Notes under the pieces: model-generated | Seen by the model: only the letters and a program-made list of their open reading frames with translations | Databases searched by the model: none | Told to the model about the DNA's origin: nothing | Part shown: positions 19,457 through 45,385 of the stretch, piece by piece | Layout of the letters: each line of letters begins with the position of its first letter | How positions within the stretch are numbered: the stretch's first letter is position 1 | Program-made: the position numbers and the translations under genes | Assembly (NCBI GenBank): GCA_048013815.1 | Contig: CM106586.1 | Location: 4,278,001-4,342,000 of the forward strand | Direction of reading: 5' to 3' | From: Setoptus koraiensis | Lineage: Eukaryota; Animalia; Arthropoda | Length of the DNA stretch: 64,000 nt

Positions 19457-20238
19457 TTTGCGATATGATGGGGTGATCCTCGAATGTTTCCAATAGACAA
19501 CAGTGATATTCCAATCTATTTATCCTCAAATAGTCAATCCTTGCCTCCCAAATGTCGTCGAGATAATGTTACTCAATCACAAGTTCTGATTTTATGCGCC
19601 GTGTACATGATAATAATTATTTGGTTGTTCTCAAAGTAGTAAAGACGGAAGAAACAAACCAACAAACAAAACAAGAGAAATGACGTTCTAGAGGAAAAGG
19701 TTTGTTCGTCATGTTTTGCGTAAATATACAAAAGACAAACAAACTGATGAGATCATCATTGCATTTTGAGGCACACGAAAACAGAGTAACAACAGAGACG
19801 AGTTGTGTGCGCGTCAACACGATACCTGAAATTGCACAACGAAGAGCGAGTTATTTGATGTTTGAATTGCGCGCTTAAACAGACAAGCTGAGATTCCGAA
19901 TAAACTCTGTTTTCTAGATAAATCCACATTGTGTTGGCCTTGATAATTATCTAGAAACTGAACTAATCTATTGCTTTGGACAAGCCAGCTCCGCGCAAAC
20001 ATTACATAATGCATTGGAGATACATATGGTGTGCTCCTCGAATACGTCAATCACTTGCTTAATCTCATCTGCTTAGCTTTATGGAGGGCCGCTCATTATC
20101 ATCATACAAATATTATTAAATTATTCACTTCATAAGCAATATACAATTACATGTAATTGTCGATTTCGTTAGACAACTCACCCGCATACCATATTTCAAT
20201 TGTTTAAGACACAAGCAACTGACAAAAAATTACTCAAC

Positions 20239-20889
20239 ATGAACAGTGAGCTAGAATTCTCCACTCAGGCGTATTGCAAGATAGTGATGCATGTCATGAA
20301 ACACTGTCATACAACTTGCACCGGTTTACTATTGTCGCCTAACCCAAAAGTTTCATCGCGCCAAGGCGATACCCAGGAAGGATCATCAAACAGATTAGTC
20401 ATCATCGATTCTATTCCTCTATTTCATCATGGCACTAATCCTACCACACCAAATTATGAGATCGCTTTGAATTCTGTTGCAGTGTACGCGCAACATCAAC
20501 AACTTCGCATAAGCGGCATCTATCAAGCCAGAGGTGAATCCGATAACACGCCTGACATTTTCAGTCGAAGAATAACAGAAAAAATCTCTGAGGCAGGTAA
20601 TGAAAACGCCATCTTATGTATGATCGACAATTATGGCTTTCAAACAATGGAAGCTAACTCGATACTACGTCCATATCAACTAGTTGATGGAAGGCTCAAA
20701 CCAACTAATACTTCAGTTATCGTCGAAGGCAACAACAATGAGCGTTTAAACAAAGAAATATTACTCTCCAAAGACAAATTATACAGGGCAATTGTGGATT
20801 TTGATGACCATCTAGATGATATCTCACTTGACTGGACTAATGCTCGCGTGACACAAAAAATTGATTATCTATGTGCTCACATATGCTAG
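20239..20889 (+). CDS. EMC8/9: ER membrane protein complex subunit 8/9 (UPF0172/COX4NB family), intronless
   Basis: Motifs TQAYCKIVMH, IDSIPLFH and VDFDDHLDDISLDWTN match the family. ATG at 20239; the TTG at 20200 in the ORF track is probably upstream sequence. Confidence 0.9.
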   Translation: MNSELEFSTQAYCKIVMHVMKHCHTTCTGLLLSPNPKVSSRQGDTQEGSSNRLVIIDSIPLFHHGTNPTTPNYEIALNSVAVYAQHQQLRISGIYQARGESDNTPDIFSRRITEKISEAGNENAILCMIDNYGFQTMEANSILRPYQLVDGRLKPTNTSVIVEGNNNERLNKEILLSKDKLYRAIVDFDDHLDDISLDWTNARVTQKIDYLCAHIC

Positions 20890-21001
20890 TATTGACACTA
20901 GATGGACTGGGTAGATGATATCAGCAGATTTTAGTTGTGTAATCTTTGTACTAAAAACACTAGTTGGTTTTGGCCAATTTGATCAATCACGAATTGTGTC
21001 A

Positions 21002-22393
21002 TTACGATATTTCATTCACATGTTCATTGTGTGTTGTATCACCACCCTCGATTAATCTTGCGGACAATCTTTTACGATCCGATGCTGATCTGTTTAGCTC
21101 ACCACCATTGGAGTTGTCGAGTACTATTAAAACTATTGAAAATATCACGGATATAGCCACCCACAGGACGAAGAACAATTCCAATAGTATATAGCCTTTC
21201 CAGTCTACCAATATTCCGGCAACATTTGATAGTACAGCTAGTCCAAGATTTTGTATGGCTTGCATCACTCCATAGGCTGTTCCGAGTTGTCTTTGCGGTA
21301 CAACGAACGCAACCAGGGGCCACAGAGCACTACAGAGTACCGAGTATCCAATACCTAGAAAAACAACCGGTATCCAAAGGTTTATAACAGTCACAGCCAT
21401 AGCCATGTGACTAAACATGACTAATAAACACGCAACCAATAAAAATATCAAATTACGTCCAACCATATCTACCAATAATCCTATAAATGGTGATGATACA
21501 GCGGATATCACATATATGAGGCTGTTGGCGGCGTTCGCTTCGTCGGGTGTAAAACTCCATTTAGAAACAAAAAACTCAGATGCTAATGCTATAAAAGGGA
21601 ATATTGTCGCATAGAAGCTTATGCAAATGACAGTGAGCAGCCAGAACTCTGCTTTGAAGTCTTTGACATCTGTAAAATTGACTTTGTCCCCACTTCGAAT
21701 TTCTTCTCTTTTCATTATTCTTGCGGCGCGTCTATCCAAGAAGCCTACTATGAGGCTGCAAATGAACGAAAGTACACATGTCAGGCTAGCTATCATCAAT
21801 GTATATCCTAGAACGTTTCTTGAATCGTATTTCTCGGCTAGTTGATTGTAAACCCTCCCCATTGTGTTGAAATTAAGTGTACTTCCAGCTCTCGACACAC
21901 TAATTTGAAAGCCAAAAACCATATTCAATTCTCTACCTTTAAACCAGGCGACTGTATAGGTATTTTGAGCAACAGCAAGTGACTCGCCACCCAGACCGAA
22001 AATGAATCGGCCCAACTGCATCATCCAGAATTGATGGAATAGGGCACCTGAGGCAAAAACAATCTGTCCTAATAATAGTAGCGCCATGAAGAGAACTGCA
22101 CTTAGTCTGATTCCAAGAACTTGATCGATGAGAATGCCCCCAAAGAAACACATGATCACATTTGGCCATGAATACAATGCGTAGAGGGACGTGAATTGGC
22201 TTGTTGTCACGGACATATCCTGTTCTATGTGTGTTTCTAAGGCACCTGGGTTGTCATAACAGAAATAACTACCGAACCCCATCAGGCTAATAAATATCAG
22301 GGTGAAGTATCGATGGTGGGGCCTGTGCGGATCAAATATGGCCCAGGAACCGATGCCATTCCTTTTAGGTTGTACCTCACAGTCCTCCTCCAT
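21002..22393 (-). CDS. MFSD1: Major facilitator superfamily domain-containing protein 1 (lysosomal MFS transporter), intronless, 463 aa
   Basis: Motifs GFGSYFCYDNPGAL, LYSWPNVIMCFFGGILID, GRFIFGLGGESLAVAQNTY and GTAYGVMQAIQNLG; about 12 hydrophobic segments. Confidence 0.95.
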   Translation of the reverse strand: MEEDCEVQPKRNGIGSWAIFDPHRPHHRYFTLIFISLMGFGSYFCYDNPGALETHIEQDMSVTTSQFTSLYALYSWPNVIMCFFGGILIDQVLGIRLSAVLFMALLLLGQIVFASGALFHQFWMMQLGRFIFGLGGESLAVAQNTYTVAWFKGRELNMVFGFQISVSRAGSTLNFNTMGRVYNQLAEKYDSRNVLGYTLMIASLTCVLSFICSLIVGFLDRRAARIMKREEIRSGDKVNFTDVKDFKAEFWLLTVICISFYATIFPFIALASEFFVSKWSFTPDEANAANSLIYVISAVSSPFIGLLVDMVGRNLIFLLVACLLVMFSHMAMAVTVINLWIPVVFLGIGYSVLCSALWPLVAFVVPQRQLGTAYGVMQAIQNLGLAVLSNVAGILVDWKGYILLELFFVLWVAISVIFSIVLIVLDNSNGGELNRSASDRKRLSARLIEGGDTTHNEHVNEIS

Positions 22394-23545
22394 GTTGATA
22401 GGTCTGGATTGGTGTCTGGGTGCGGCAGTCTGAGGTTCACTGCGAGTATTGAATGAAATTGATTGTTGTCAGATGCGACCAATGGGTGAATGCATGAATG
22501 TGTTCTGACGGGAAGGTTCGATGGGTGACAGTTTGTGATTAAAATCTAATAATGATGATATACGAATGAATTAGAAAGGCCACCTAAAAAGTTGGTAGGA
22601 GGGCTGGGGAGTAAAACAGGATGATTTCTAGATAAGATGATATTTTACATGTACCAATGGCAAACACATTCATACATATGGATTAATCCCAACCGCAACA
22701 ATATCAGTATGGCTACCACTTGTGAGCCATACGCTCGCCATGTTTGTAATCGAAACTGAGTTCATTGGGTGACCATTTAAAAAGTGGCACCACACACTGA
22801 TAAATGTGTTGCCATAACTGTTCTGTGTGAAACACAATGACGCGCCCAGTTGAAGATTTCTTATGTAGGTGTTGCTCCTGTTCCCTTGTTTTCAGCACAA
22901 CTGAAATACAGATAAGCGCTCTCTATGTATGAAGTCACCAACTAAATTATAACCCAAATGCCCGATGCACAATTTCGAGTACAAAAATAGAACACGAACA
23001 CTTCATGTACATGTTGTGCGTCCTTCAGATGTTATCTATGCTTCAGTTGTGCACCCTGAGAGCAGTTACATCTTCGGGCACAGAAAATATGTCGCGTACA
23101 AAATGTGAATTCGCGCAACGACGTGCAACCTTGTTAGGCACTGTGGGGGCTAGAGTAGTACATTCGCATGCATATTGAGCGTTTTCAAGTTTGCATGTGA
23201 ACTTGGAATTGAATATCAGTGCACAACTATGAACAAACATAAACAAACTGGCAAGCGTGTTGTTTGTATTGACGACAAGCTGATCTAGCGAAATTCTGCC
23301 GACAACCTCCTTTGGTATTATTTTTGGCCACCATATGATTGTTAGACGGATCTATCAATCTGATTTAATCAAATATTCACATCCCATAACAATAGCAACA
23401 GATATCTACTACCTTCGGCTTGCTAAAGAATTAATGTTGTAAAATACGTCATCTATAGTGGAGTATCGGCTGCGATTTGAGCCAAATATTACGATACAGA
23501 CAATAACCCGATCGTGGTAGATACAAGTAACAAATTCATTTCAAA

Positions 23546-24004
23546 ATGGTCTACATCAATTCAAGTAAGTATTTTCAGTAACTTATCTTGTCTAGACTGA
23601 ACAGTCTACTAAGATTCTTATCACCAACTGATAACAATAGAAGGCTAATAACCAACACTAATCAATCGTCTGATCCACCCTATGATTCAGGAGGGGAGGT
23701 TGTCGAGCAGTACCGTACAAACATCTTCTGGAAGATAATCCTGTTCTTTGTATCATTCTTCAAAACACTGGTAGGATTGGATAGCTCTAGCGATAAGAAG
23801 AATGACGACAAACATACAAACTCCAACGGAGGAACATTCTCCAGTCCGTTCTCGGGCGGCGGAGGCGGAGGTAGTGGTAGCAGTGGCAGTAACAAGGGAA
23901 ACAAGGGCCCAAGACCTTTCGGACCAAGAAAATTGGCCACAATAACAGACTTACCACGAGCACCACCAACGATGGGATGCAGTAGCGGTGGTTGCTGCGG
24001 GTGA
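23546..24004 (+). CDS. SelK: Selenoprotein K homologue, copy B (Cys form); join(23546..23564,23691..24004), 110 aa
   Basis: Same exon sizes (19+314 nt) and intron phase as copy A; 126-nt GTAAGT..TTCAG intron; ends GGCCG*. Confidence 0.88.
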
Positions 24005-25492: not shown

Positions 25493-26330
25493 TGACGACA
25501 ACAATAACGAGTCGGCACGAGATCTTACACCGATGTAATCATTTACATCAATGGATGCTGGGCTTCACTGGTGCATAGATCACGAAAAAATGAACAAGCA
25601 AAGATTGTATGGTGCTTTCATTGAATCAGAAAAAAAGAAACAATTTTAACCAATCTCTAAATAAAGTTGTTGTGTTTTTAATCTTGGGCATTCAAGCTAT
25701 CACAATCCTGTCCAAAGTGCATACTCTGATCTTTTCCAACCTCTTTTATCTCTAACGTTCATATCGTTCAAAGCCAAAAGCTTGTCAGGCGCCAATTATA
25801 GCAGCTTTGATTTGATGTGCGTTCAAGTGAGGCATTCACATCACGAATCATATAGACTAAATTGGTAAGCTAGAGGCATTTAGCCCTAGCGCAAGACTCA
25901 CTGTTATTAGCCAGGTAAAAATGAATGCTCTACGCAAAAATATGTTACAAATAGTAACGGTGGCGTGCAGGTAGGTTGTTGAAAGGGGCTAATATTGTAT
26001 TAGTAACATCATATAACAAACGATTGAATGTTATCACTTTTATTCACAAAAATAAAACAGAGCGTCAACATTTGGAAATTTGTGTTTCGTTGGTTGGCTG
26101 TGTTGCCTGTTGAAACGCGAGTCAGGCGAGTGGTTGTAAATCAATCACAACTAAACAAATGTGTATTGAATGGTTACACGATGACGCAATAATGTAACAA
26201 TAATGAACAATCCATTTATATTCACGTATATATACGTATATGTACGTATATTCATGTATATATAGATTGTATAGTATATACAATGTATGTGTGTATATGC
26301 CTGGGCAAATTGGCACAATAGTGGTCAAAG

Positions 26331-26551
26331 TCAACAATTAGATGGCGTCAATATCTTTTTGAATGCCTTTCGAAATTCCAAATTGAAAATAGTATATATA
26401 ATTGGATTGACTAGGCTATTTATATAACCCAGCCATGTTGTTAATAGGAAGACAGTCATTCCTGGGCGGCAGTCTGTAGATTTCATCCAAATGCAAATGC
26501 CATCTAATATGTTGCACGTGAAAAAGGGCGTCCAGCACACCAAGAAGATGC
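26331..26551 (-). CDS. Dop2R: D2-like dopamine receptor, terminal exon (TM6, TM7, helix 8)
   Basis: IFLVCWTPFFTCNILD...CRPG...TWLGYINSLVNPIIYTIFNLEFRKAFKKIL...C*, with CWxP, NPxxY and a short Cys-terminated tail typical of D2 receptors. Acceptor AATAG at 26552; the phase matches the upstream exon. Confidence 0.95.
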
Positions 26552-26721
26552 CTATTATTGGGAGCATACGGTAACATATTGACACCGATATATACGTATA
26601 TATATAAATATATATGTATAATATATATGTATAATACAATTTAGAGAATAAAAGGTTAGCCAGTGATACAATGAGGGTTGTGTTGTTGTCGTTGTTGTTG
26701 CTACCATGTAACAATACTCAC

Positions 26722-29700
26722 CCAATACAATGGCCAATGTTTTGGTGGCTTTTCGTTCGCGTTTTGCTGCCGTCTTCTCACTTTTTCGTCTCTTTCTACC
26801 ATTTTTCCTTGATTTGTTTTTGCTCTTTTGTATGAGGGCCAAAGAATTAACACCTGTCCTTAATTGTGACACTGCCGTAGCTCGCTCTGGGTCATTATTT
26901 GTCGTGGGCGTGCAGGTCGCTAGTGGCCTATTGTTGTCGACGTCAAAGTTGTCAAGTTTGGCGCTTGCACGTTTGCCAGTTGCCACAGGAATATTGAATG
27001 TGTCAGTGGTGTTGTTGCTGTTGCTGTTTGCATTGTTGTTATTAACGCTATTCACACTATTGTTGTTGCTGTTGGTGTTGTTGTTGACGCTAGTCGATTC
27101 ATTGATTAACGTCAGCCGGTCCGCCAACAACAATGACGTGTCCGCGTTGCTGCTAGATGATTTACCTGGCGACACAACGAACGAGCCAACGTTCAATTGT
27201 GTCACATTGTTTGCCACATTCATGCCTGCTGCCGCTTGTTTTATGCTTGCCTCGCGAGCCATTTTGCCACCAATATCCGCGTTATTGGGCCCACTGGCGC
27301 CGCCGACAACAACAACAAACTCGTGACTAATGTGTTTGTCGAGCAGATTTTCCTTGTTGTCTTGCGTCTCGAATCTTATGCGCTGTTGCTGTTGTTGTTG
27401 CTGTTGTTGTTGTTGCTGCTGCTGTTGTTGTTTTGCCGTATGCAAATTGTTCGCGCCGGCAGACTCCTCTAAAGTAAGCAAAGTGTGCCCGTGGTAATTA
27501 TGCTCATCATTTGGTGACATTGTTATCGAGCACTGACCATTACCACTGGCTAATGGTAGCGCCGGCGACTGGATTATATTAGGGCCGCTCGATGATCGAT
27601 GACCAGTGGTCAGCGGGCGGTCGATAATAAAATCACTATTAGTCATGTTTAATTGAGTGTCGCCCGGCTCAATGAAATGATGATGATGATTCACTTCAAC
27701 ACCGTCTAAGCCACTAGAGCAATTTGCGTGTGCAGGCGAATATGACTTTTGCAAATCATGCTGCATCTCATTACCGCGAGCATCATTAGTGACATTACGC
27801 AACAATTGCTGCCCGTTGTTGTCCAATGGCTGCTGCTGCTGCTGTTTGTTGTCTTGGCACGAGATGGTGCGACTGACTTGATAGTTATAACAACAGCTCT
27901 TGGGTTGTTTGTTGAGCGATGATCTATTGCTACTGGTTGTGCGACCAGCAATGCCTCTCTGGTGCTGGCAAGACGACGAGCCGGACATACACGACGACTC
28001 GTTGGAATTTGTTGTCGTATTGGAGGTTGACGAGGCAATTGGTTTGCGCGTTATAAGCGCACTTTTGCTTGATTTCGTCGTCGGCGGCGGGTCGGTTAAC
28101 GTCACTTCCGGTTGCTGTTGCTGCTGCTCACTGGTTTGGTCTTTGGTATTTAACTCATAATTGTTGTTGTTGTTGTGCTTTTGCTTTTGCTGCTCGGCCG
28201 ATTGTTTTGCTGGCTGTTGGTCGCTAATTGCGGGCGCACGCAACGACGTTGATCTACTGGACGACACAACATGCGCCACCGTCTTGAAGACGCGCTCGCG
28301 AAAACTGCTGCTCTTTCTAGCATTACTCGACTCTTGGACACTGGCCGTCAATTGATTACATAATAATTTGTTGTTGTCCGTTTGTTTGCCGTCGTCCAAT
28401 GGGCCGCCTAGCGACCTTCTTTTGAGCGACGTTTTAAAGGGCGGGTTGCTTGCATTGGTCACTTGGGTTGTTGTTGGCGTTTTGCTCATACTTTCTGTTG
28501 CCTGCTCCGATGCCAATGAGTTGTTGTCGTCGTTGTCCGTTGATCCGGCCGACAAATCGGCCGAGTTTTGGCTGTAATGGCGTGTCGATGACACATTGTA
28601 GTTGCTGCTGCTGACCACGCGCGACAACGCCGACGAACAATTTCTATTTGACAATCTTATCGACAATCTGGTCGATCTAAACAACTTTTGCAGCGCTCGT
28701 CCGCCACCCAAAATGGGCGACGACAGCGCGCTCGCTCTGGGCGACGACTCTCGCTTGCAGCCAACAACAACATTTGCAGCAGTTGTTGTCGCCATCGTCG
28801 TCGGCTTCTGGTCGCCGGCCGGCTTGCCAGTGCCGTCGAGTGGCACGCGCGGCACAGCCACAACGTGCTGCCACGCGTTCGCCTGTGAGCTAATTAGCAT
28901 AATGGTTTTGTCTTCGCCGTCAGCCTGTTGTTGTTGTTTATTGTCCGGGCAACTGACGTTTCGGTCGCTCTGTTGTGCTCGCTGATGGCTTACGATGCAG
29001 TTGTCGCCCAGTTTTGCTGGTCGCCCAATCATTTGATGGTCTGGTTCATTAGCGAGGCGGCACCTAGATGACGCCACCGAGCCACCGGCTTGACAGTTGC
29101 AACAATGATGACATAGCGTCTGATGGTGAACTAGTGACAATTGACGCGCAATGACGCAATCATGTTGGTGTTTGTTGAGATGATTATGACTATGACATAT
29201 CATATGATGAACATGACGATGATGCTGTGCCAATGGCTGTGCTGTTGCGCAACTACCGTATTTGCGCGCAGCATTAAATTGTGCGCAATTTCCTGTTTCA
29301 CCTGTTTTGTCGTCAGATATGGAGGCGCCGTTGTCGTCGATGGGTCGTCGCAGTTGTTGTCTGTCATTTGTTTGTTGTTTGTTGCTATTAGCGGCACTTA
29401 ATCGCTTGCTTATATCACTTATTTCATCGATCACATTGGCTATAGCAGCGCTGCTGTTGTTGCCATCGATTGTTATAACGGTCTGCTCGTGTCTAATTGC
29501 TTGCTCGTTGTTCGCTCGCACAAAGCACTTCCTGTTGTCGGCTGCTGCTGCTGCCACTGCCGTTATTGCGTCATTGTTGTTGTCGTTGTTGGTGGTTGTG
29601 ACTGTCGTTGTTGTTGTTGTTGTTGTTGCTGTCGTTGTTGTTGTCGCTACATAATCGGCGCTTGCTGCATTTGGTTTGGTGGCGCTAACGATGACGACAG

Positions 29701-32700
29701 TGTCACCATCGGCGACTTTTGTAATTGTCGCTGCATCATTAGCGCCATCAGCTGATCGAGGCGCTCGCGTGTCGGCGGCTAATTGTTGTCGATTGTCGTC
29801 TGGGTGTGTGCGAACGCGTTCGCCGTTCGAACGTTCCGAATAAGGCGAACACGACGACGAAGAAGGCGACGAAGATGCCGTTGACAATATGATAACCGCA
29901 TTGAAACAATTAAACAAGCACTCGTGACAAACCAAATTGTTCCATGGGGCCATCAGCTGTTCAACGACATGCTGGTAACAACCCGTTAGCTGTTGTTGTT
30001 GTTGTTGTTGTTGTTGTTTTGCTCCTTTAGACACACAACACTCCAACTCGCGCCCATACTGCTCATACAGCTCGTGCTGCCGCCAGGCGCACACCGGCGA
30101 ACCGGAAGTGGGCCCACTCACGTCGTCAATCATCATATTTTGGTCTGTTTGTTTTGTTGTCTTTTTGTCTTTTTCAGTAACATGAGCGCCATTTGATGAG
30201 GCCAGTGTAATTGACAGAGTTGACTCAGTGTGGCCAGCGTCAGTCTGACACTCGATGTGGCCAGTTGCATTGTTGTCGCTGTCAGCGTTGCGCTGGTCAC
30301 TAGTGCCAGTTTCGTTGCTGTCTCGCTGTCTAGACAATCGACTGGCGCCATTGTGGTCAGTGTTGGAGACAGCTCCGGATGACGCAAGCCAGACGACAGG
30401 TGAATGGTGCGCTGCTTGTTGTTGTTCACCGTCTGGCGTCTCTGTCGCTGTTGTTGTCGCTGTTGTTGTCGCTGTTGTTGTTTCGCTCGAGACAAGACGC
30501 TGCTGTCTTTGCTCTTGTCTTATCTGTTGTTGTTGGCCTTGTTGTTGTTGCTGCTGCTGGCGGCCCGTCAAATTGGAATTGGGCAGCCTCGTGCTGTCGA
30601 TCGCGGCGTCATATATCGAGCTGTAATAGTCGACGGCGTAGTTGCTCCACAACCGTTTGCTTGTATCTGGCTGGATATTGTACAACTGCGCCCCATTGTT
30701 GCACAACACAAACCGTCTCTCGTCGCCGATCAAACCCGCGCCCGACACACAATAGTCTCGCTGGCCGCAATAATAGTAATCCAGTTGTTGTTGTTGCTGC
30801 TGACTCTTTTCGACAACTATCACCACCATCCAAGTGGCGCTATTATGTAACTTTGCGCAACTGCAACTGCAACAACTGCAACTGCTAATAAACTGGCCAT
30901 TATGATCGACGCCGCTCTTTGGGCGCTCGTGAGCGCCCCTCGCTCGCCCATTATGTTGGCCGGTTATCCAAGTATCAATTTGGGACCTATTACTATCTGT
31001 CGTCGCTTCGGGGGGCCCAATTTCGTTGTGGCCATTGTCGATGATTTTTCGCTTCTTTTCATCTTTCTCGCCCCCTTTTCGCGTCTCCTCTTCATCGCAC
31101 CCATTTTTGGCGGTCTCAATATTTGCACTTGTTTGATCATCGCTCCTTGCTGGCGCTATTTTCGAGCTGCAAGCCAGCCAGGCCCCGCCATTACTCAGCG
31201 CGGCAGCACCCATCGGGTCAGCGCTATCCGCCGCACACCCCATGGCGCCGCTCCGATATTTAAAGTGACCGCCAGCGGTCCCAGCCAGGGTGCCCATCGC
31301 TTCGCCAGGCTGTCCGCCAACGTGCCCGGCAACAATATCCAGCTGTCGGGCTCCATCAACGGGCCTCGTTATGGCCATCGGTTCACTCAAATGGTCGCAA
31401 GCAGTTGTCGTGGGATTTGTTGCATCACCTTTGTATGCTTGTCTGGTCGTGTGAGCCGGGTGCATTATTGGATCCGGTGTCACATAATGGCAACTGTCTC
31501 TGGCACAACAATTGTCATAGTCTCTGTTGTCTTGCTCTGTTGTCGCTTGCATTGTTGCCCCAAAATGCTGCCGCTGCTGCTCGCTTTTTATTGGACATTT
31601 TGGCGAGCTTGACTTTATCATCGCTTCACTTTTAGTTTTGTCGCTGTCGGCCGGCGGCCGGTTTGCGTTGCAGTCCGACGATAGCGACGACACCAACAAT
31701 CGCTGCTCGTGCTGCCTAAGCTGCCCGTGCCTATTTGCATAAAGCCATTGATCTTGTTCACCAGCGTCGCCAGTATTATTGTTATCACTATCACTATTAT
31801 TATTATAATGGCCACTTGCAATGATCATATTATCGTTGTCTAGACACACTAGAGACGGGCCACTGGCGCCGCTGCCCACCATTGGCGACAAACTGGCGCA
31901 ATTCGCAATGGCCTCACTGGTCAAGTTTATATTCAGCGTTGGATTGAAATCAGCGTTCAATTGGCGACAATTGCCGGCGACAATTGTTTGTTTATTGGGC
32001 CCAACTTTGTTGCTGTCGCTACTGTTGTTTTTGGGCCCCAAGCGGGCGCACGATGTTGAGTGCGCTCCATTGGCCGCCAATTCCAATTTGGCGCCACCAG
32101 ACGAGCCGCCAAGCCCGATCTGTCCAATGTTGACCGGACTGTTTGCCATTGTTGTCGCCGTTGTCGCCGTTGTGGCCGCTTCACCCAGGCCGCAGGATTC
32201 GCCATCTCGCATTGGGGCCCCGGCGCCGTCTTGGCCGGCGCCGCTCAATCTCCATATCAGTCCGACGGTGGCGCTTCCGTCCAATTTCATTGCGCTCTTG
32301 CAGCAGACGCATTTGGGGCGCCTCAAGTTGCTCTCGAGCGTCTCCTCGTGCCGCCTCGTGTGACAGGTGCACGCGCTGTGACGCGCAGAGGTCATGTCCG
32401 CCGCAGTGTGACAGCAGCGCCCGCCGCTGCTGTCAGTGCACGCGCTCGCCATGGGGGCCCCATTATTTTGCTGTTTGCATACGGCGCCTATAACACGCCT
32501 ACAAGTATCCGCTGTCAGCTGCTTTCTGTCATCATCATCTGTGTTTCTGTCACCTGTTCCATTAGCCGTTGTGTCAGCTGTTCTATTGGTCGTTGTGTCA
32601 GCTGTTCTATTGGTCGTTGTGTCAGCTGCTCTATTGGCCCTTGTGTCAACTGTTGTATTGGCCCGTGTGTCAGCTGTTCTATTGGCTGTTGTATCAGCTG

Positions 32701-33561
32701 CTGTGTCAACCGGATTAACGGTGTCACCTGTTTGTTGTGTCAAGTGGTTCGCAGTGTTCAGTTGGCAGCCACTGGCAAGCTCTTGCGGCCGATCGCGTTG
32801 ACGGCCATGACACAGGTGGTGACGAGCATGATGAAACACACGATTGGACGCTGTTGTTGTTGTCGCTGTTGTCGCCGTTGTTGTTGTCGCTGTTGTTGTC
32901 GCTGTTGTTGTTGCCAATAGACAGCAACAATGAGTGTCGCTTTGCGATCCCTGGCGGCCGTCGTCGCTTGATTGCAGCCGACTGTCAGTTGGTTGAAGTG
33001 GTTGCTTTTGGTTGTTGTTGCTCGTGCTTGCGCACTCGAACAGTTGACCAGTCACGTGACGATCAGTGTCAGTCTTTGTCACTGTGCCACAGTAACTCTG
33101 ACAACAGACGCTAGGGTAATGATTGTCACTATTATCACAGTAGAGCGGATTTTTTGTTGATAGGTGGCGCCTTGAACAGGTGAGCTGGCCAGTGGCATTG
33201 TCGGCCGTGGCGCAGTAGTACACTAGCGCCATAGACAATTTGTCCCGTTGTAATGTTGTTGCTGCTGTTGCTGCTGCTGTTGCTGCTGTTGTTGCTGCAG
33301 TTGGCCGGATTAGCTCAGGTGGAAAGCGCTGGCCGGCGCTGTCTGTGCTGTTGACCTCTGCAATCACTAATTCCGATGTGTGCGATATGGCGCCACAACG
33401 GTCGTTGTGGTGCAAGCCACTGCACAATGCAGCCGACTGGCGCTCACTGTCACCTGCTGTCGTGTCCATTATTAATGTTCCTGTTACTTTGCGGTTGTGG
33501 TTGTTGCTGTTGTTGTTCGCATTGGCGAGTTGCCCTGCACCGGACATAGCGGCACAAACAG

Positions 33562-33616
<55 letters not shown>

Positions 33617-35534
33617 GGCTGTGTCCACTGTTAATTTGATTATGAGCTCATCTATCAGAGTGGCATGAAAGCAGTTGTAGTTGCTCGACTCAGTCGGCCA
33701 GTGCAGCCGGTCGAAATTGTTTGTGTTGCGCAACGAATTGAGCAGCGGTATTGCGGTGGCCCAGGCCTGCTTTTGTTGTTGCTGCTGCTGTTGTTGTTGC
33801 TGTTGTTGCTGTTGATGCTGGCGCTTGTCGTTGTTGTTGCTGTTGTTGACCACAAACATGATGTCCGACATGGCAAGGTGCGTGCAAGCGGCATCATAGC
33901 TGGCCGAAGGCACAAGTAAGTCGTTGATAATGTGATCGATTGTGAGGTTGCCAGCTTTGTATTGAGGCTGGCCCAAAACAGGTGACAAGCCGGCCCTGGT
34001 TGGCGCGTAGTTGATCACCTGAGCGGCGGTGTCGCTGCTATCGCTGTTGTCATGACTGGCTAACTGGCTAGTAATGGCATTGTGTGCGACATTGTCCATA
34101 CAATGCGACGATTGATTGTTAATGAGACATCCATTAGCGTCCGTTAGCATGTTGTCGACATTATCATCGTGCTCGTGATCGACTGATTGAATTAATGGCG
34201 GCGCTCGCGACACAGCTCGCAACAACGACTGGCTACTGCCGTTGTTGTGGCTTCGGCACTGACCCGCATCACTGACACTTGTCGCATTGATTGATGATGT
34301 GTCCCATTTATCACTAATTTTATGCCCAAGCTCAGCCAGCTTAAGCTCGCTGGCTTGCTCGCCTCGGCAGCTCTCGCCAGCCTGACAGCCATCAATCGGC
34401 TGCGCATCAAGATGGCGCTGGTTGTTGTTGTTGTTGCTGTTGTTGTTGTTGTCGTTGTTGTTGTCGTTGTTGCTGTTGTTGGTGCTGCTGCTGGTGCGGT
34501 TGTTGTCGGTGGCGGTTGTGTGCAAGTCGGCACAACACGAGCAGTAGCAACAACTACAAGTGCAACTACAATTGCAAATGGGCGACATTGTAACCATGGA
34601 CCGGCTGCTGCATACATCACAGCTATCACTGTTAATGTAATCCATGGGCGATGACGTAATCTGGTTGTGCTGATTTGTTGCCGCTTGCTTGCCGCCGCCG
34701 CCGCCGCTTAGTGCAGCCGATGTGTCATAGGGGCGCCACTCTAATTGATATGATTGACAGTGGCCGGCGACAGGTACAAGCGACGCCACAATCTCGTCCG
34801 CTTGATCGTGTTTATTTTTGCTTGTTGTCCGGTCACCATTATAATCCAAATTGACACTGTTGGTTTCATTTGTTTGCGCTGCCGTCGTCTTATGTGGGCC
34901 TGTTAACGCTTCGCTTGACCCATTTAATGGGCCGTCTGATTGGCCTCTATGAGCGGGCTGCTGTGATTCCGTTGGCGTGGTGCTTGTCGTTGTGGTAGTG
35001 GCTGTTGCTGTTGCTGTCAAGACGGCCACTTGATTGTTGTTGTGCTGATGACCAATTGATTGATTGGTTGTCCGATGTTGGTTTTGTTGTTGTTGTTGCT
35101 GTTGAGCTGCGTTGTTGTTGGTGTTGTTGTTTGTTTGTTTGTGTGTATCGGACACTTGACCGATATTGGCCGACTGCTGATTATGATGCTGATGAGCGCT
35201 ACCTTGCGCCATCTTTGTTGTCGCTGATGTTGGCTTGGCAGCGTGACCGGCCAACGTTTTCTTGGTGCGCGATCTGATGGCCAAAAATATCTTGCAATAT
35301 AGACCGGTCATTAATATAAATGGTATGAAAAAAGACACTAGCGATGACCAAAATATAAATGTCGAGTTGTAAAAGATGCATAAATCGGGCTTCCGTTCTG
35401 CCGAAGTGTTCAGGCCGATCAATATGGGCGCCCCGGTGCACGCAGATATAAACCATACCATGCCAATTGTCAAGAAGGCACGAGTGCCATTCTTATGGGC
35501 ACTATAATAGATTGGCTTTGCCACCGCCATGTAC
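26722..35534 (-). CDS. Dop2R: D2-like dopamine receptor, giant 8813-nt exon: DRY tyrosine, TM4, TM5, ICL3 of about 2840 aa, start of TM6
   Basis: Acceptor TTTCAG|G TAC ATG (35535/35534) and donor TTG G|GTGAGT (26722/26721); 1+2937x3+1 nt with no stop. TM5 FWSSLVSFFIP carries the catechol-binding serines; the loop ends KRERKATKTLAIVLG. Confidence 0.88.
32561..32710 (-). repeat. In-frame 24-bp minisatellite, about 6 copies, encoding (A/T)NRTADTT octapeptides inside the Dop2R loop
   Basis: Unit GTTGTGTCAGCTGTTCTATTGGYC on the + strand; translation DTTANRTADTRANTTVDTRANRAADTTTNRTADTTTNRTADTTANGT. Confidence 0.9.
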
Positions 35535-35801
35535 CTGAAACGACCATAATGTAGCGGCATTAGATTTTTTACATTAGACAGGACATTTGATATCATTCGC
35601 GAGTATAATGGTTGGCTCAAATTGACCCCAAATTGGGTGATATACATTTGTGTGCGAATATTTCATGAATATATTCCACGAGTCAGTCATGGATAGGTGT
35701 GGATAGTCGTGCAGGACGGGTCAGGGAAAGTCGGTTGTGGATAGTTATGCCCATGGATAGTCATGCAGAGCGTGCTCGGTTGTGAATAGCCGGCGAATGA
35801 G

Positions 35802-35907
35802 GGTGAATAGTCGGTAGAGAGTTGGTGAATACTCGGCGAATAGTCGGTGAATACTCGGTGAATACTCGTTGAATACTCGGTGAATAGTCGGTGAATAGTT
35901 GGTGAAT
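35802..35907. repeat. 11-bp tandem repeat GGTGAATA(C/G)TC, about 8 copies, intronic
   Basis: Read directly from the sequence. Confidence 0.9.
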
Positions 35908-36356
35908 GAGGGGATCGGTGGGTGCGAGAGGCAAATATGCGTGACCTTGGATTCAAATTAAACTAGATTATCATCTCTAACAAGCGGCAAGGCAAGCTCA
36001 AGTGAGCGCCGTCTCGAACGATTCAATTGATTTAGATATACAGCCAGATATAGGTGGCTGTATAACGGTTTTAGTGAGCGATAGTGAAACAATACAAACA
36101 AAGAGGCGAGCTCGTGATCATAATAAATAATCATAAGTAATCATAAACAGACCAGCTGCTATCATGAGTCATTACGTAATTTCTGGCTAAATCTATTGCA
36201 TCATTTGAGCTGCTAGCGAAAAATTTATTTATTATGGTATAACCCGTTATTATATGACCACTGGTTATTATCCATGCTCGTAGTAGTAATAATACTGATA
36301 TCGCACACTAACTGGCGGCATGCGAAGTGCACTAGTCGAGTGGGGCAGCCCGAGTG

Positions 36357-36420
36357 AGAGTTTGAGGGATAGAGTTTGAGGGATAGAGTTTGAGGGATAG
36401 AGTTTGAGAGAGTTTGAGGG
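36357..36420. repeat. 14-bp tandem repeat (GAGTTTGAGGGATA) x4, merging into (GA)n
   Basis: Read directly from the sequence. Confidence 0.85.
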
Positions 36421-36478
36421 AGAGAGAGAGAGGAACACAAATGACCAACACTTTTATCTTTATGTTATTCATATTTAC

Positions 36479-36588
36479 CTATCTATGCTGATGGCCACCA
36501 AATTAAGTATAGAGGCGGTGGAACAGGTAACGTCGGTGGCAATATAAAAATCACATACAAAATCACTGAGATTCCATTCGTTGTTTAC
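36479..36588 (-). CDS. Dop2R: D2-like dopamine receptor, ECL1-TM3 exon (110 nt; absent from the ORF track)
   Basis: CCATTAG|GTA AAC AAC GAA TGG ... ATA GAT AG|GTAAAT translates to VNNEWNLSDFVCDFYIATDVTCSTASILNLVAISID(R). It carries the TM3 Asp and the DR of DRY; its phase-2 end matches the giant exon. Confidence 0.93.
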
Positions 36589-41600: not shown

Positions 41601-43928
41601 TTGTTTGTGTGTGATAGTGAAACGCAGAAAGAGGTCACCGTGTTTTCTATCGAAAACAATCTATTGCTGCTCGATTTGTGTGCTCAAGGGGCCGACCTTG
41701 GGGCCGCTCACAATGACAAGAGATACAAATAGAAGTTTTTGCATTCAGTGTCTAATTGTGATTCAGTAATCCAATTTTCAGAACATCCTATATAAACAAA
41801 GTGCTCATGTATATTCATCGGCTCTTTGGCCGGTTTTGGTGGCACATCATCGCTGCATCATCACTGTAACATGACAACTGTCCGACTGGCGACTGTTCGT
41901 AGCACCAAAATTAGACCTCATTAGCCGATGTATATGTATATGTGGTGTATGTATAATCCTGGTGCGATGACGATTCGGGCGTTTCGTTCCTATGAGCACG
42001 ACCGATGAGCGTTGCAGCACGATTTTTTCACTCGAGGCCAGTCTTTTTGTCAGCCTCCATGTCACAGGGGGGCCCGTGACAACTCACCGGCCAAAATAGG
42101 ATCGGTATTGTCATTGTGCAGACTGAACACTAGAGCTCGAGAGTCGCCAAGCGGCACTTCAATCTCATTGGGGATACATACAAAATGCCACATCAACTGT
42201 GCACTCATTTCTGTTGGTTAAAGTGGCCTATCCAGAATGTTATTTGCATATTCAGTGTAGTCAGTGTCTGCCAGTGCTGCTGTCAGCAACGACTACTGGT
42301 GGTGAGTACCAGCAAATAGAGTGGAAACAAGGAATTAACTATTATTAATTATTGGCCAGCGCATATTAACGCAGCACTGTCGCGCTTCCATCTGGCCCCA
42401 TCGCGCCAGGCCCCTCGCTAGGCCCCTCGTAATGGGCTCATCAGGCTGTTGGCTGGCTAGCGGGCAGATTCATGATAGGCCGTACGCAAAAGCGACTTTC
42501 ACTTTTGATTTTGTGTGATTTGTCGCGGGCCAATCATTTGTATAGCGGCCCAGCTGCCGTCAATTAGCTTTTGACACGAATGACAGGTGACAGCTATTTC
42601 GGCCAAACAACCAAACGGGGCCCAGCTAGTGGCTAGCTCTGTAATATTAAATCCGGCGCCCATAAGTAACGGATAATAGCGGCCGCTGGCCGATAAGCTC
42701 CATTATGGGCGCGTTGTGTGTCGCGCGTGGCAATATTGTGTGGCCGAGTTTGCACGTGCTCGTTGGAAAATGTCCAAAATAGAGCCGACGAGATGGCTGA
42801 ACGCGGCCTGGCCCCCCGGCCCGCCCGTTTGAGCCTAATTTGCAGTGGCAAATGGCGCCAACAAAAGGCAAGCTCGTGCGGTGAGCATTACATAACTATA
42901 GCCGTTGTCAACATTGTATTATTATCAAGTTACGTCACAATTCATTATATCACTCACCTGTGAGTGCGCGCGTTTTCGATGATGCTGTTAGCTCCATTAA
43001 AGTTGGCGCACTTGGCGCCAGTGTCACTGGTCAAGGCTGGCCAGCGACACACACACACACTGACCAGATTGTGGCCAGAGTGAGGCCAGTGGTTGTTGTT
43101 GTTTGGCACAAGTTAAGTGTGTGTGTGTGTGTGTGTGTGTGTGTTGTCCATATCTCGAGTGGTCAATCTAGGGGTTTATCATCGTGGTCGTTGTCGTCTC
43201 GAAAAACGATAAACCATTATATGTGGCAACTTGTCTGGACGGCCAACAACAACAGCAACAACAACGACAACGACAACAACAACAACAACGACAACAACAA
43301 CTCAAGTGTACACACGCACGCCAATCGTGTGACACGAGCTCGGCGGCCACTTACGCAACACTTGCCAGCACGTGAACTAACAACGCGAAATGACAGTGGA
43401 CACAGGAACTGAAGAGCTGGCGCAATCTTGGGGCGCCTCGCGCGTTGTCGCCATTGCGCCGCGTGTGATCATGGTTGTGTTGGGGCCCCAACAGAACGAT
43501 GATCACACGCCAACGTGACGCAATGGCAGCCAGCGAATGCAAACAGACGGACAAAACTGGCTGTCACCATCAAACAGATGTTACTGGGCCCATTAAGTGT
43601 TGGCCGCCATTACAAACAAGCCACTGGCCTCGTTGTCCGAATTCAACTCACCTGAGACGGGCGACTTTTTTGCAGCTACACAGGCGCGCAGAAAAAAAAA
43701 CTGAGTGACTTTTGAAATTCCAGCGCGCCACACTTGGCTGGCAATTTATTTTGGCCTCGCTCGATGACGTAATATCTCTCTGTTGCCCGCTCTCTCTCTC
43801 TCTCTCTCGATTGCTCCGTTTGGGGGAAGGGGGGAGCCAATATCTCTATCGCTCGATGACGCAATATATCGTCTCTCTAGCGGGCGATTCGCGCCACGCA
43901 CCGCCAATTGCCAGCAGCGCCTCTCTAC

Positions 43929-44003
43929 ATCTGGCCAGCGTATATCTGGCCAGCGTATATCTGGCCAGCGTATATCTGGCCAGCGTATATTTGGCCGGCG
44001 TAT
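43929..44003. repeat. 15-bp tandem repeat (ATCTGGCCAGCGTAT) x5
   Basis: Read directly from the sequence. Confidence 0.9.
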
Positions 44004-44050
44004 AGTCGGCGTACCGGCGCACATAGCGCACGGTATACATAGGCCGATAT

Positions 44051-44104
44051 TGCTGGATATGTGCTGGATATGTGCTGGATATGTGCTGGATATGCGCTGG
44101 ATAT
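44051..44104. repeat. 11-bp tandem repeat (TGCTGGATATG) x5
   Basis: Read directly from the sequence. Confidence 0.9.
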
Positions 44105-45130
44105 CGGGGATTATGCGCGCGGTGAATCGTAAACATTCTGGGAATTGCCAGCTATGACTTATATGACCAGCATGTGAACAGCATGCATATGCAAGCCCCG
44201 GAGGTAATGTCTGCCCGAAATCATGAATATCCGCCAAAATCAAGCGCCAAGCCACTCAGATCGCATCTGGCAGCGCGCATTTAGTCGGTCGCATTTAGGC
44301 CCAAAGGCCTAAGCAGTGTACTTGGCGCGCCCGCGCGGATATTGATATATATTGATGGATATCCGGCCGGGCGGCGCTGGCACCCGTGTGTCAGCAGTGT
44401 CAAACAAATTGTCGCGCACACTTGGCTGATTAAAACAATATACACTCACTGGCAGTGAGTCACTGCACTGAAAATACCCATTATTTAAATATATATATTT
44501 GTACTATTCACCATGAATACCTGGGCCCAAGCGGGCGTCAGCTGACGCTTGGTATGGACTTTGGGGGCCCCATTCAGACGACATTCTCTCAGACAACTTC
44601 GGACTTTTTGCGAATTGTGTGCCGGCGCCAACACGGCCAAAGTGACAACTGAGCAATTTAGAGGCGACTGCAATTTTGGTTACCATTGAGATTTTTGAGA
44701 TTTAACAAACTCACAAACACTATTATGTAATGGGTCAAATTGAATGTTGCCAGACAGCGCCGGCCGACAAAGGGCAGCGCGCGCCAGACACCAGACAGCA
44801 GAGCGGCCACTCAGACAGCAGGCAAAAGCAGACGCCAGACGAGAGGGGCCCCCAGACCCCCAGCCCCCAGCCAGACGCCAGTGCATTAGCGGCCCGGGGC
44901 GGCCGGTTGCTGGATTAGGCGGCGCCCCAAATAAGTCGCACACAAGCCGGCAGACAAGTGTGAATGTGTCGCCGCTGGATGTTTGTCCAGCGGAGATGGA
45001 CAACAAAGATAAGAGCGCTGGCCACTAAAAAGACAATTGGCCAGTATCAAGTGCTGGTCAGCTGAGCGCGCGCCTCCTCCGGCCTGAGTGCCAATCCAAT
45101 AAGGAGGCGCGCGTCTGGCGGCAACCCGAC

Positions 45131-45230
45131 GCGCCGGCCGTCGGTCTGGCAACTCTGTGCGCCGGCCGTCGGTCTGGCAACTCTATGCGCCGGCCGTCGG
45201 TCTAGCAACTCTATGCGCCGGCCGTCGGTC
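45131..45230. repeat. 28-bp tandem repeat (GCGCCGGCCGTCGGTCTGGCAACTCTAT), about 3.5 copies
   Basis: Read directly; the units abut with no unique spacers, so this is not CRISPR-like. Confidence 0.9.
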
Positions 45231-45297
45231 GGGGCGCCCGACGGGCGCGTCAAGGTTACCAGAGGGGCCCCTTCGGCCCGGCCGAGAGGCGCTCTCA

Positions 45298-45385
45298 GTC
45301 GGCGCTCGGTTGGCGCTCGGTCGGCGCTCGGTCGGCGCTCGGTCGGCGCTCGGTCGGCGCTCGGTCGGCGCTCGGTCGGCGCTCG
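45298..45385. repeat. 11-bp tandem repeat (GTCGGCGCTCG) x8
   Basis: Read directly from the sequence. Confidence 0.9.

What the first reader, a model, noticed from the sequence alone, without database searches (positions are those of the whole stretch)
26722..35534. Dopamine D2-like receptor with a third intracellular loop of about 2840 aa encoded by one 8.8-kb exon
Seen: a stop-free 8813-nt exon with canonical splice sites in phase with the flanking TM3 and TM6-7 exons. Only about 90 codons are TM4/TM5/TM6; the rest is a Q/N/T/S-rich, apparently disordered loop. The ligand and activation motifs are intact (TM3 Asp, DRY, TM5 SS..S, CWxPFF, NPxxY, terminal Cys). Known: ICL3 of D2-type receptors is normally about 100 to a few hundred aa and controls G-protein, GRK and arrestin coupling. 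Inference: this would be a receptor of over 3200 aa, about 90% cytoplasmic loop. The loop may act as a scaffold or condensate-forming domain, or it may be a giant exitron spliced out to give short isoforms. A stop-free frame this long is not expected without selection.
Basis: partly seen in the sequence, partly recalled or inferred. Interest (0 to 1): 0.92.

Follow-up and report, generated by a model that had tools for sequence, protein, structure and literature searches.

The report
Dopamine receptor with giant inner loop
A dopamine D2-type receptor gene carries one 8.8-kb exon that would place about 2,840 mostly disordered amino acids between membrane helices 5 and 6, over ten times the longest such loop in human receptors; the open frame is real and looks selected, but no RNA data could show whether the whole loop is translated.

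Summary
Exon 35534-26722 (8,813 nt) has no stop in 2,937 codons. The other five frames have 86-199 stops, and about 97 are expected by chance (P about 1e-43). Its splice sites are canonical and in phase with a TM3 exon (36588-36479, completing DRY) and a last exon (26551-26331: CWTPFF, NPIIY, terminal Cys). Both halves match D2/D3/D4 receptors best.

The loop is not an isolated oddity. In a tree the gene falls in a strongly supported clade of D2-like receptors. The nine others there with loops of 700 aa or more run to 708-1,033 aa, each in one ORF, against 76-544 aa outside the clade. In one close pair of relatives the loop has dN/dS 0.27.

The window's loop (2,838 aa) is 2.7 times the largest relative. 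It matches no other protein or domain. Its polymorphisms are in-frame triplet slips and third-position changes.

Best reading: a real D2-like receptor whose mid-loop has grown by triplet-repeat slippage and unique polar sequence, kept open because TM6-7 lie downstream.

Not shown: transcription, splicing, translation. No RNA run holds the locus, so the exitron idea stays open. The TM1-2 exons are not in the window.

Unchecked notes from this scan report other giant loops elsewhere in the same genome.

The parts
36479..36588 (-). TM3 exon (110 nt): VNNEWNLSDFVCDFYIATDVTCSTASILNLVAISID + the first 2 nt of the Arg codon of DRY
   Evidence: tblastn of 15+ D2-like relatives at E 1e-7 to 1e-14; HMM hit at E 2.5e-18; acceptor AG at 36590-36589 and donor GTAAAT at 36478 read
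35535..36478 (-). Intron between the TM3 exon and the giant exon (944 nt, GT..AG, GC about 0.42)
26722..35534 (-). Giant exon, 8,813 nt: 1 nt + 2,937 codons + 1 nt, with no stop
35270..35533 (-). TM4, extracellular loop 2 and TM5, through the conserved AIRSRTKK (residues 1-88 of the exon)
   Evidence: Pfam 7tm_1 at E 7e-15; D2 receptor at E 1.3e-14; 59-64% identity to the nearest relatives
26756..35269 (-). Third intracellular loop, about 2,838 aa: polar and disordered-looking, with Q, N and T runs and Cys clusters. No domain and no homologue found.
32548..32700 (-). 24-nt tandem repeat, 6.4 copies, encoding an octapeptide repeat (TADTTTNR-like) inside the loop
26722..26755 (-). Start of TM6 (KATKTLAIVL + the first nt of Gly). 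The roughly 22 residues before it (KRRKSEKTAAKRERKATKTL) are conserved with relatives.
26552..26721 (-). 170-nt intron inside TM6 (GTGAGT..AATAG, GC 0.30). It is absent from all relatives seen, where TM6 is contiguous.
26331..26551 (-). Last exon: rest of TM6 (CWTPFF), TM7 (NPIIY), a short tail ending in Cys, and the stop at 26333-26331
   Evidence: Pfam 7tm_1 at E 6e-10; D3 receptor at E 7e-17; coordinates

Best explanation
This is a genuine arthropod-type D2-like (Dop2R/DOP3-type) dopamine receptor gene. The middle of its third intracellular loop has expanded to about 2,838 aa.

Shown:
- The receptor core from TM3 to the C-terminus is intact.
- The juxtamembrane parts of the loop, about 10 aa after TM5 and about 22 aa before TM6, are conserved with relatives. 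From general GPCR knowledge (not tested here), these are the segments that contact G proteins.
- Everything between them is lineage-specific, polar, largely disordered-looking sequence.
- The locus is length-polymorphic through slippage at triplet and hexamer repeats.

Inferred:
- The loop grew through that slippage, plus accumulation of unique polar sequence, at the one site of the fold that tolerates insertions.
- The frame stays open because TM6-7 are encoded downstream of the loop, so any stop or frameshift destroys the receptor.
- There is also moderate constraint on the amino-acid sequence itself, as expected of a disordered regulatory region with phosphorylation, arrestin or scaffold sites.
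- The receptor signals like other D2-like receptors (Gi/o). The loop would act, at most, as a modulator or tether.

The expansion appears to be the extreme of a clade-wide trait and, from unchecked notes of this scan, possibly of a genome-wide habit.
For: Open frame and coding signal:
- 0 stops in 2,937 codons against 86-199 in the other frames; P about 1e-43.
- Splice sites are canonical and in phase with the TM3 and TM6-7 exons.
- In the non-low-complexity half of the loop, codon-position periodicity gives chi2 114. Random sequence merely purged of stops gives 18 +/- 7, with a maximum of 45 in 200 trials.
- No AT-rich, intron-like stretch lies inside the exon, and there is only one GTRAGT motif.

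Identity:
- D2/D3/D4 are the best solved-structure matches for both halves.

Relatives:
- Exhaustive HMMER finds Logan genomic ORFs with TM4-5, a 708-1,033 aa loop and TM6-7 in a single ORF.
- In a tree they form a clade with the window at 100/99 support. Other arthropod D2-like receptors carry 180-330 aa loops.
- In the close pair P0018/P0151 the loop has dN 0.012, dS 0.044, omega 0.27. That is 24 nonsynonymous against 26 synonymous changes, binomial P 7e-6.

Independent DNA data:
- Contigs of DNA-like runs under at least two study labels tile 27440-32299 at even depth. Runs X2 and X3 are probably one data set filed twice.
- All 5 indel differences are multiples of 3 and sit in triplet or hexamer repeats.
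- All 4 substitutions fall at codon position 3; three are synonymous.
Against: - There is no transcript or protein evidence. No RNA run was shown to hold the locus: runs X1-X3 also hold 0.63-0.97 of the adjacent intron/intergenic DNA.
- The TM1-2 and N-terminal exons were not found in the 27 kb upstream, so the full gene model is incomplete.
- The loop has no detectable similarity to the relatives' loops or to anything else searched. Amino-acid constraint in this species therefore rests on 4 substitutions and a periodicity statistic.
- Codon usage did not separate the reading frame from the shifted frames.
- The dN/dS figure comes from one pair of relatives, not from this species.
- The 5' third of the exon (32300-35534) is supported only by shared words (0.92-0.95 of the whole stretch), not by laid contigs.
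Confidence: 0.7

Rival explanations
1. Exitron or cryptic-intron reading: much of the loop is removed from most mature mRNAs by splicing inside the exon. The common protein would then be a D2-like receptor with a loop of ordinary length, and the giant form would be a minor isoform.
For: - D2-type receptors are known for alternative splicing within ICL3: vertebrate D2S/D2L (own knowledge), and the several Drosophila Dop2R isoforms of 760-905 aa listed.
- No RNA data were available to exclude it.
- Short in-frame introns of under about 300 nt could hide in a stop-free frame by chance.
Against: - The whole 8.4 kb is stop-free, so every part must be translated in some isoform that is under selection.
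- The known introns here have GC of 0.30 and about 0.42. No 150-nt window of the exon falls below 0.38, and there is only one strong donor-like motif.
- None of the 15 best-supported contig joints listed has intron ends (CT..AC on the + strand); 42 more were not shown. All listed have sides of about 20-29 nt at repeats, and the runs are DNA-like anyway.
- Nine relatives keep 708-1,033 aa loops as single ORFs, and one pair shows omega 0.27.
Confidence: 0.2
2. Passenger-only reading: the loop has no function of its own. It is neutral filler produced by repeat slippage and kept open only because TM6-7 must be translated.
For: - No domain was found, and no homologue of the one loop stretch searched (residues 1190-1550).
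- No conserved island exists across the clade's loops beyond the juxtamembrane segments.
- AF2 pLDDT is 35, and the protein atlas does not recognise the sequence.
- The locus is length-polymorphic at repeats.
- Unchecked scan notes report similar insertions in unrelated proteins of this genome.
Against: - Omega is 0.27 in a relative's loop, far below 1.
- Codon periodicity exceeds what stop-avoidance alone produces.
- 3 of the 4 substitutions are synonymous.
- 73% of the loop is not low-entropy.
Confidence: 0.25
3. Assembly artefact: unrelated poly-Q/N/T-containing sequences were joined at triplet repeats into a false exon.
For: - Short-read contigs break at every simple repeat (27378-27439, 29569-29649, 29991-30018), so they cannot confirm the joins.
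- The loop is richer in GC (0.51) than the TM exons (0.37-0.44).
Against: - Chance joins would keep strand and frame only about 1 time in 6 each, and there are about 10 repeats.
- Depth in X1 is even, 139-180, across all unique segments.
- X1-X3 hold 0.92-0.95 of the exon's words; the assembly's likely source sample (X4-X6) was checked only on the flank, where it holds 0.90-0.98.
- Relatives show the same architecture in independent assemblies.
Confidence: 0.03

Closest known systems
Arthropod D2-like dopamine receptors (Drosophila Dop2R/DD2R, Q8IS44; Dermatophagoides farinae XP_046920467; Microplitis XP_057329705)
   Same: - 7tm_1 fold, TM3 Asp, DRY, TM5 SSxxS, CWxPFF and NPxxY.
- A long ICL3 and a short tail ending in Cys.
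- A multi-exon gene.
- It groups with them in the tree. The defining traits are those given in PMC5533763.
   Different: ICL3 is about 2,838 aa against 180-330 aa in these receptors. There is an extra intron inside TM6. The TM1-2 exons were not located.
Unnamed clade of D2-like receptors known only from Logan genomic contigs (P0001, P0002, P0018, P0026, P0031, P0035, P0037, P0040, P0045)
   Same: - Nearest relatives: 59-75% identity in the TM parts, clade support 100/99.
- The same TM3-exon/TM4 intron position.
- A giant, fast-evolving polar ICL3 with Cys clusters and conserved juxtamembrane segments.
   Different: Their loops are 708-1,033 aa and are contiguous with TM6-7 in one ORF. The window's loop is 2.7-4 times longer, shows no detectable similarity to theirs, and is followed by a 170-nt intron.
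Human class A GPCR ICL3 as an autoregulatory, disordered gate (Sadler et al. 2023, PMC10033409)
   Same: A disordered ICL3 between TM5 and TM6, next to the G-protein pocket. In that study, receptors with long ICL3s show lower average conservation of the G-protein interface, and the authors model ICL3 as a gate that filters G-protein coupling.
   Different: Human loops span 10-240 aa. This one is over ten times the maximum, so whether the gating model scales to it is unknown.
Low-complexity insertions in Plasmodium falciparum proteins (PMC7534687, PMC3140889)
   Same: In-frame homopeptide and low-complexity expansions inside otherwise conserved proteins, length-polymorphic through slippage.
   Different: Here only about a quarter of the insert is low-entropy. 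The composition is Q/N/T/S/A at GC 0.51, not AT-driven Asn. A genome-wide pattern was not tested here.

Membership tests
D2-like dopamine receptor (class A, aminergic; arthropod Dop2R/DOP3 type) | Rhodopsin-family seven-helix domain | tested here: inconclusive
   Pfam 7tm_1 covers TM3-TM5 (profile positions 84-190) and TM6-TM7 (211-260). TM3 was found by tblastn and HMM. The TM1-TM2 exons are not in the window.
D2-like dopamine receptor (class A, aminergic; arthropod Dop2R/DOP3 type) | Amine-binding Asp in TM3 and catechol-binding serines in TM5 | tested here: met
   IATDVTCSTASILNL in the TM3 exon. WSSLVSFFIPF aligns to D2 YSSIVSFYVPF.
D2-like dopamine receptor (class A, aminergic; arthropod Dop2R/DOP3 type) | Activation motifs DRY, CWxP and NPxxY | tested here: met
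   D-R(AG|G)-Y reads across the 36479/35534 junction. VCWTPFF and NPIIY are in the last exon.
D2-like dopamine receptor (class A, aminergic; arthropod Dop2R/DOP3 type) | Long ICL3, short C-terminal tail (ending in Cys) and a gene with introns (PMC5533763) | tested here: met
   ICL3 is 2,838 aa. The tail is 20 residues after NPIIY and ends ...SNC. At least 3 exons were found.
D2-like dopamine receptor (class A, aminergic; arthropod Dop2R/DOP3 type) | Closest sequence relatives are D2-like receptors | tested here: met
   The best PDB hits for both halves are D2, D3 and D4. Named relatives are 'dopamine D2-like receptor' of Drosophila, Microplitis, Dermatophagoides and Artemia. The tree puts it in that group.
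D2-like dopamine receptor (class A, aminergic; arthropod Dop2R/DOP3 type) | Binds dopamine and lowers cAMP through Gi/o | not testable with these tools
   Needs heterologous expression and cAMP or BRET assays.
Exitron (an intron inside a protein-coding exon) | Spliced and unspliced forms both seen in RNA, with splice sites inside the exon | not testable with these tools
   No RNA run holds the locus. A sequence scan finds one GTRAGT motif and no AT-rich segment.
Slippage-driven low-complexity or disordered insertion | Triplet repeats that vary in copy number between individuals while the frame is kept | tested here: met
   16 tandem-repeat rows, mostly period 3 or multiples of it. 5 indels of 3 or 6 nt between samples, all at short repeats.
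Slippage-driven low-complexity or disordered insertion | The same habit seen across the genome's proteins | not tested
   Only unchecked first-reader notes from other windows. No other example lies in this window.

The most novel reading that the evidence does not exclude
The 2,838-aa loop is a working part of the receptor, not filler. It would be a disordered platform that recruits kinases, arrestins or scaffolds, or that gates G-protein access, on a receptor whose TM1-5 and TM6-7 halves act as two membrane modules tethered by about 300 kDa of cytosolic chain. That would make it the largest ICL3 of any class A GPCR found in these searches. It would also be a natural test of how far the 'ICL3 as autoregulator' model extends, and of how TM6-7 insert into the membrane after thousands of cytosolic residues.
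Probability: 0.2. Interest if true: 0.8.

Novelty: new variant of a known kind. Interest (0 to 1): 0.6.

Why it matters
- **How much insertion ICL3 tolerates.** ICL3 is the most variable and least understood part of class A GPCRs. In human receptors it spans 10-240 aa and tunes G-protein selectivity (PMC10033409). Here a clade has 700-1,000 aa loops under purifying selection, and one member reaches about 2,840 aa. That gives a natural series for asking what long disordered loops do.
- **Membrane insertion.** If the loop is translated, helices 6 and 7 must find the membrane and the first five helices after a very long cytosolic stretch.
- **Annotation.** Gene predictors are likely to split or truncate such genes. 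No protein of this size sharing the TM4-5 words exists among 5.8 billion protein clusters.
- **Pharmacology.** Arthropod dopamine receptors have been pursued as insecticide targets (PMC4368516, PMC3265452), so an unusual receptor architecture in a chelicerate lineage may matter for pharmacology.

Tried and rejected
- **RNA evidence.** The rna-kind search returned three runs of unknown type. After laying them I first read the 3'-to-5' fall in depth in X2/X3 (34 to 5) as poly(A)-primed RNA. I dropped that reading when the same runs proved to hold 0.63 of 10 kb of adjacent intron/intergenic DNA. They are low-coverage DNA, and X2 and X3 are probably one data set filed twice.
- **Intron control.** The 170-nt intron was meant as an internal control but was lost: no contig was laid on 26300-26499 in any run, probably through the human-likeness filter.
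- **Loop homology.**
  - Word-index searches for giant (1,615-5,140 aa) and normal-length relatives through TM4-5 found nothing.
  - A 361-aa complex piece of the loop also found nothing.
  - blastp against the relatives' loops found nothing, with or without the low-complexity filter.
- **Domains and folds.** Pfam on the whole exon gave only 7tm_1. The protein atlas gave no meaningful hit: recognition 1,403, best score 0.73. AF2 without an alignment gave pLDDT 35, which is weak evidence of disorder.
- **Internal duplication.** No large repeats exist within the loop or elsewhere in the window.
- **Codon usage.** RSCU correlation with three neighbouring genes was weak in all frames (0.35, 0.25, 0.33), so it was uninformative.
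- **TM1-2 exons.** Motif scan, tblastn and an HMM against six frames of the window and of loci L001-L004 found none.
- **Extra membrane helices in the loop.** One borderline hydrophobic window at residue 1867 (KD 1.5) was not accepted.
- **Conserved islands across the clade's loops.** None at 60% or more outside the juxtamembrane parts. A K-R-R-S-[IM]-[KR]-L...IRG motif occurs in three relatives only, not in the window.
- **Other.** Rfam gave no hits. Literature searches found no report of ICL3 loops of this size, and SRA accession searches gave nothing.
Full report
**Observation**

The feature lies on the minus strand. A stop-free frame runs from 35662 to 26558, 3,035 codons.

- The acceptor is TTTCAG|G and the donor is G|GTGAGT.
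- The 2,937 full codons hold no stop. The two other sense frames hold 106 and 199 stops, and the antisense frames hold 86-110.
- A first-order Markov model of the exon predicts 97 stops, so log10 P(0) = -42.8.
- The next longest open stretch anywhere in the 64-kb window is 488 codons, a real MFS transporter gene.

**Gene model**

- Upstream, a 110-nt exon (36588-36479) encodes TM3: VCDFYIATDVTCSTASILNLVAISID. It ends in AG. With the first G of the giant exon this makes Arg, followed by Tyr, so DRY is intact.
- The giant exon opens with TM4, extracellular loop 2 and TM5. It closes with KRERKATKTLAIVL plus one base of a Gly codon.
- A 170-nt AT-rich intron follows (26721-26552, GTGAGT..AATAG).
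- The last exon (26551-26331) continues G-IFLVCWTPFF...NPIIYTIFNLEFRKAFKKILTPSNC-stop.
- The three exons give 3,047 aa.
- The N-terminal and TM1-2 exons were not found in the 27 kb upstream by motif scan, tblastn or a profile HMM. The HMM also missed them in the 2-4 kb upstream of the relatives' genes, so they probably lie behind a long intron. The figure of 'over 3,200 aa' is a fair inference, not an observation.

**Identity**

- Pfam 7tm_1 matches both halves, at 7e-15 and 6e-10.
- The best solved structures are D2, D4 and D3 for TM4-5, and D3, D2 and D4 for TM6-7. Serotonin 1, alpha-2 adrenergic and muscarinic receptors rank behind them.
- Named relatives from the exhaustive HMMER search are 'dopamine D2-like receptor' of Drosophila (Dop2R), Microplitis, Dermatophagoides farinae and Artemia.
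- TM3 Asp, TM5 SSxxS, CWTPFF, NPIIY, a 20-residue tail after NPIIY and the terminal Cys are all present. These are the family's defining traits as given in PMC5533763.
- Ligand and G-protein coupling are inferred, not tested.

**The loop itself**

Measured from AIRSRTKK to KATKTLAIV, it is 2,838 aa.

- Composition: S, A, T and N at about 10% each, Q at 8%. Q, N, S and T together make 38%.
- Eight Q runs reach up to 16 residues, and one N run reaches 18. There are three Cys clusters and one His/Cys-rich stretch.
- Only 27% lies in low-entropy windows. 70% of 100-aa windows fall on the disordered side of the charge-hydropathy plot. No confident extra membrane helix is present.
- Pfam finds no domain. 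The protein atlas does not recognise the sequence. AF2 on the most complex 600 aa gives pLDDT 35, with only a poly-Q helix. Without an alignment that is weak evidence.
- There are no large internal duplications.
- Tandem repeats are nearly all of period 3 or its multiples, including a 24-nt unit repeated 6.4 times.
- The loop is richer in GC (0.51) than the TM exons (0.37-0.44). It holds no AT-rich, intron-like stretch, and it has one GTRAGT motif.

**Is the loop more than an open frame?**

Three lines say yes, modestly.

- **Codon periodicity.** In the 1,398 codons outside low-complexity windows, base composition differs by codon position with chi2 114. Random Markov sequence purged only of stops gives 18 +/- 7, with a maximum of 45 in 200 trials.
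- **Differences between samples.** Contigs of DNA-like runs under at least two study labels tile 27440-32299 at even depth. They differ from the assembly by five indels of 3 or 6 nt, all at short repeats. They also differ by four substitutions, all at third codon positions, three of them synonymous.
- **The relatives.** These are described in the next section.

Codon usage was uninformative.

**Relatives**

The exhaustive search of 1.84 billion representatives returned many ORFs from Logan genomic contigs. They start in TM4, run through a huge loop and end with TM6-7 and the Cys-bearing tail.

- Among the 54 hits that carry both halves, ICL3 ranges from 76 to 1,033 aa with a median near 240. 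Ten exceed 700 aa; two of these (P0018 and P0151) are near-identical.
- A maximum-likelihood tree of the TM parts puts the window in a clade with 100/99 support. The other members are nine long-loop receptors and one 423-aa sequence. The window is sister to the rest.
- Drosophila, wasp, house-dust mite, brine shrimp and millipede receptors lie outside that clade, with loops of 180-330 aa.
- The contigs are genomic. They carry several genes on both strands, and a TM3 exon sits just upstream at the same intron position.
- Loops are alignable only between close relatives, at 34-52% identity. No conserved island spans the clade except about 10 aa after TM5 and about 22 aa before TM6, which the window shares.
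- In the one close pair (P0018/P0151, 96.7% identical) the loop has dN 0.0118, dS 0.044 and omega 0.27. That is 24 nonsynonymous against 26 synonymous changes where neutrality predicts 77% nonsynonymous, P = 7e-6. The TM parts have omega 0.17, and flanking non-coding DNA is 96.9% identical.

Giant loops in this clade are therefore translated and constrained. The window's loop shows no similarity to any of them or to anything in 5.8 billion clusters. No protein of 1,615-5,140 aa shares its TM4-5 words.

**What could not be shown**

- No RNA run holds the locus. The three runs returned under 'rna' are of unknown type. They also hold 0.63-0.97 of the neighbouring 10 kb of intron/intergenic DNA.
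- The contig joints all sit at repeats with about 20-29 nt on the shorter side. None of those listed has intron ends.
- The hole at 26300-26499 occurs in all runs and is probably a filter effect.
- Transcription, the exitron alternative and translation therefore remain untested.
- The 5' third of the exon is supported only by shared words.

**Mechanism**

- *Shown.* The receptor core from TM3 onward is intact. The juxtamembrane loop segments are conserved. The frame is open, and slippage polymorphism is active.
- *Inferred.* The mid-loop is the insertion-tolerant site of the fold. From my own knowledge, split muscarinic and adrenergic receptors cut in ICL3 reassemble, and fusion partners are routinely placed there for crystallography. 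Repeat slippage plus drift enlarged the loop. Selection keeps it open because TM6-7 lie downstream. Moderate amino-acid constraint suggests regulatory sites, as in other disordered ICL3s (PMC10033409).
- *Context.* First-reader notes from other windows of this genome report a muscarinic receptor with a loop of about 1,260 aa and an allatotropin/orexin-type receptor with one of about 1,250 aa. They also report an opsin with one of about 350 aa, and large in-frame inserts in a cadherin, an Ig domain, P-glycoprotein and KDM2. These are unchecked and could not be tested here. If they hold, this locus is the extreme of a genome-wide habit.

**Verdict**

- The interpretation as a D2-like receptor with a loop of about 2,840 aa is supported at the DNA level and by comparison with relatives.
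- Functional claims about the loop are open.
- This is a new, extreme variant of a known kind. It is over ten times the human ICL3 maximum of 240 aa (PMC10033409) and 2.7 times the largest relative found.
- The literature searches found no description of such loops.

Noticed in passing
window 7821-8990 (-): An exon encoding the RGS-homology and kinase domains of a G-protein-coupled-receptor kinase (GRK2-like N-terminus; Pfam RGS 5.5e-18, Pkinase 1e-60) lies 18 kb downstream of the receptor gene. This is probably chance linkage between a GPCR and a GPCR kinase.
   Followed up: partly
window 26552-26721 (-): The 170-nt intron inside TM6, between AIVLG and IFLVCW, is absent from all nine long-loop relatives, where TM6 is contiguous. 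It is either an intron gain in this lineage or a loss in theirs. The intron starts with an ACAACAACAACGACAACAAC tract like the loop's repeats.
   Followed up: partly
window 26756-35269 versus the TM exons: The loop has GC 0.51, while the conserved TM exons of the same gene have 0.37-0.44. The inserted sequence has its own composition.
   Followed up: partly
window 20200-24001: Three neighbouring genes: a UPF0172 (EMC8/9-like) ORF at 20200-20886 (+), an MFS transporter at 21005-22393 (-) and a SelK/SelG-like ORF at 23582-24001 (+).
   Followed up: partly
window 43850-45520: Minisatellite-like tandem arrays lie in the upstream intron or intergenic DNA. They read as repeated peptides in open frames (for example RAPTERRPSAD units and ARYTL units), and (CA)n tracts occur nearby. 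They look non-coding.
   Followed up: no
Read laying on 26300-32299, runs X2 and X3: Contig depth falls steadily from 34 at 27440 to 5 at 32170 in X2/X3 but is flat in X1. I first read this as 3'-biased RNA. The runs also hold intergenic DNA, so the gradient remains unexplained.
   Followed up: partly
relatives P0002, P0018, P0026, P0035, P0040 and window loop residues 320-334, 1552-1559, 2141-2146: Short Cys clusters (CCC, CxCxC, CSCCSCSC) recur in the otherwise unalignable giant loops of the whole clade. They might be palmitoylation or metal-binding sites.
   Followed up: no
L002 8150-9580 (-) and about 11100-11841 (-): The relative's contig carries a called 7tm_1 gene next to its D2-like gene (8150-9580) and, further along, an uncalled ORF with TM1-3 of another aminergic-type receptor.
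   Followed up: no
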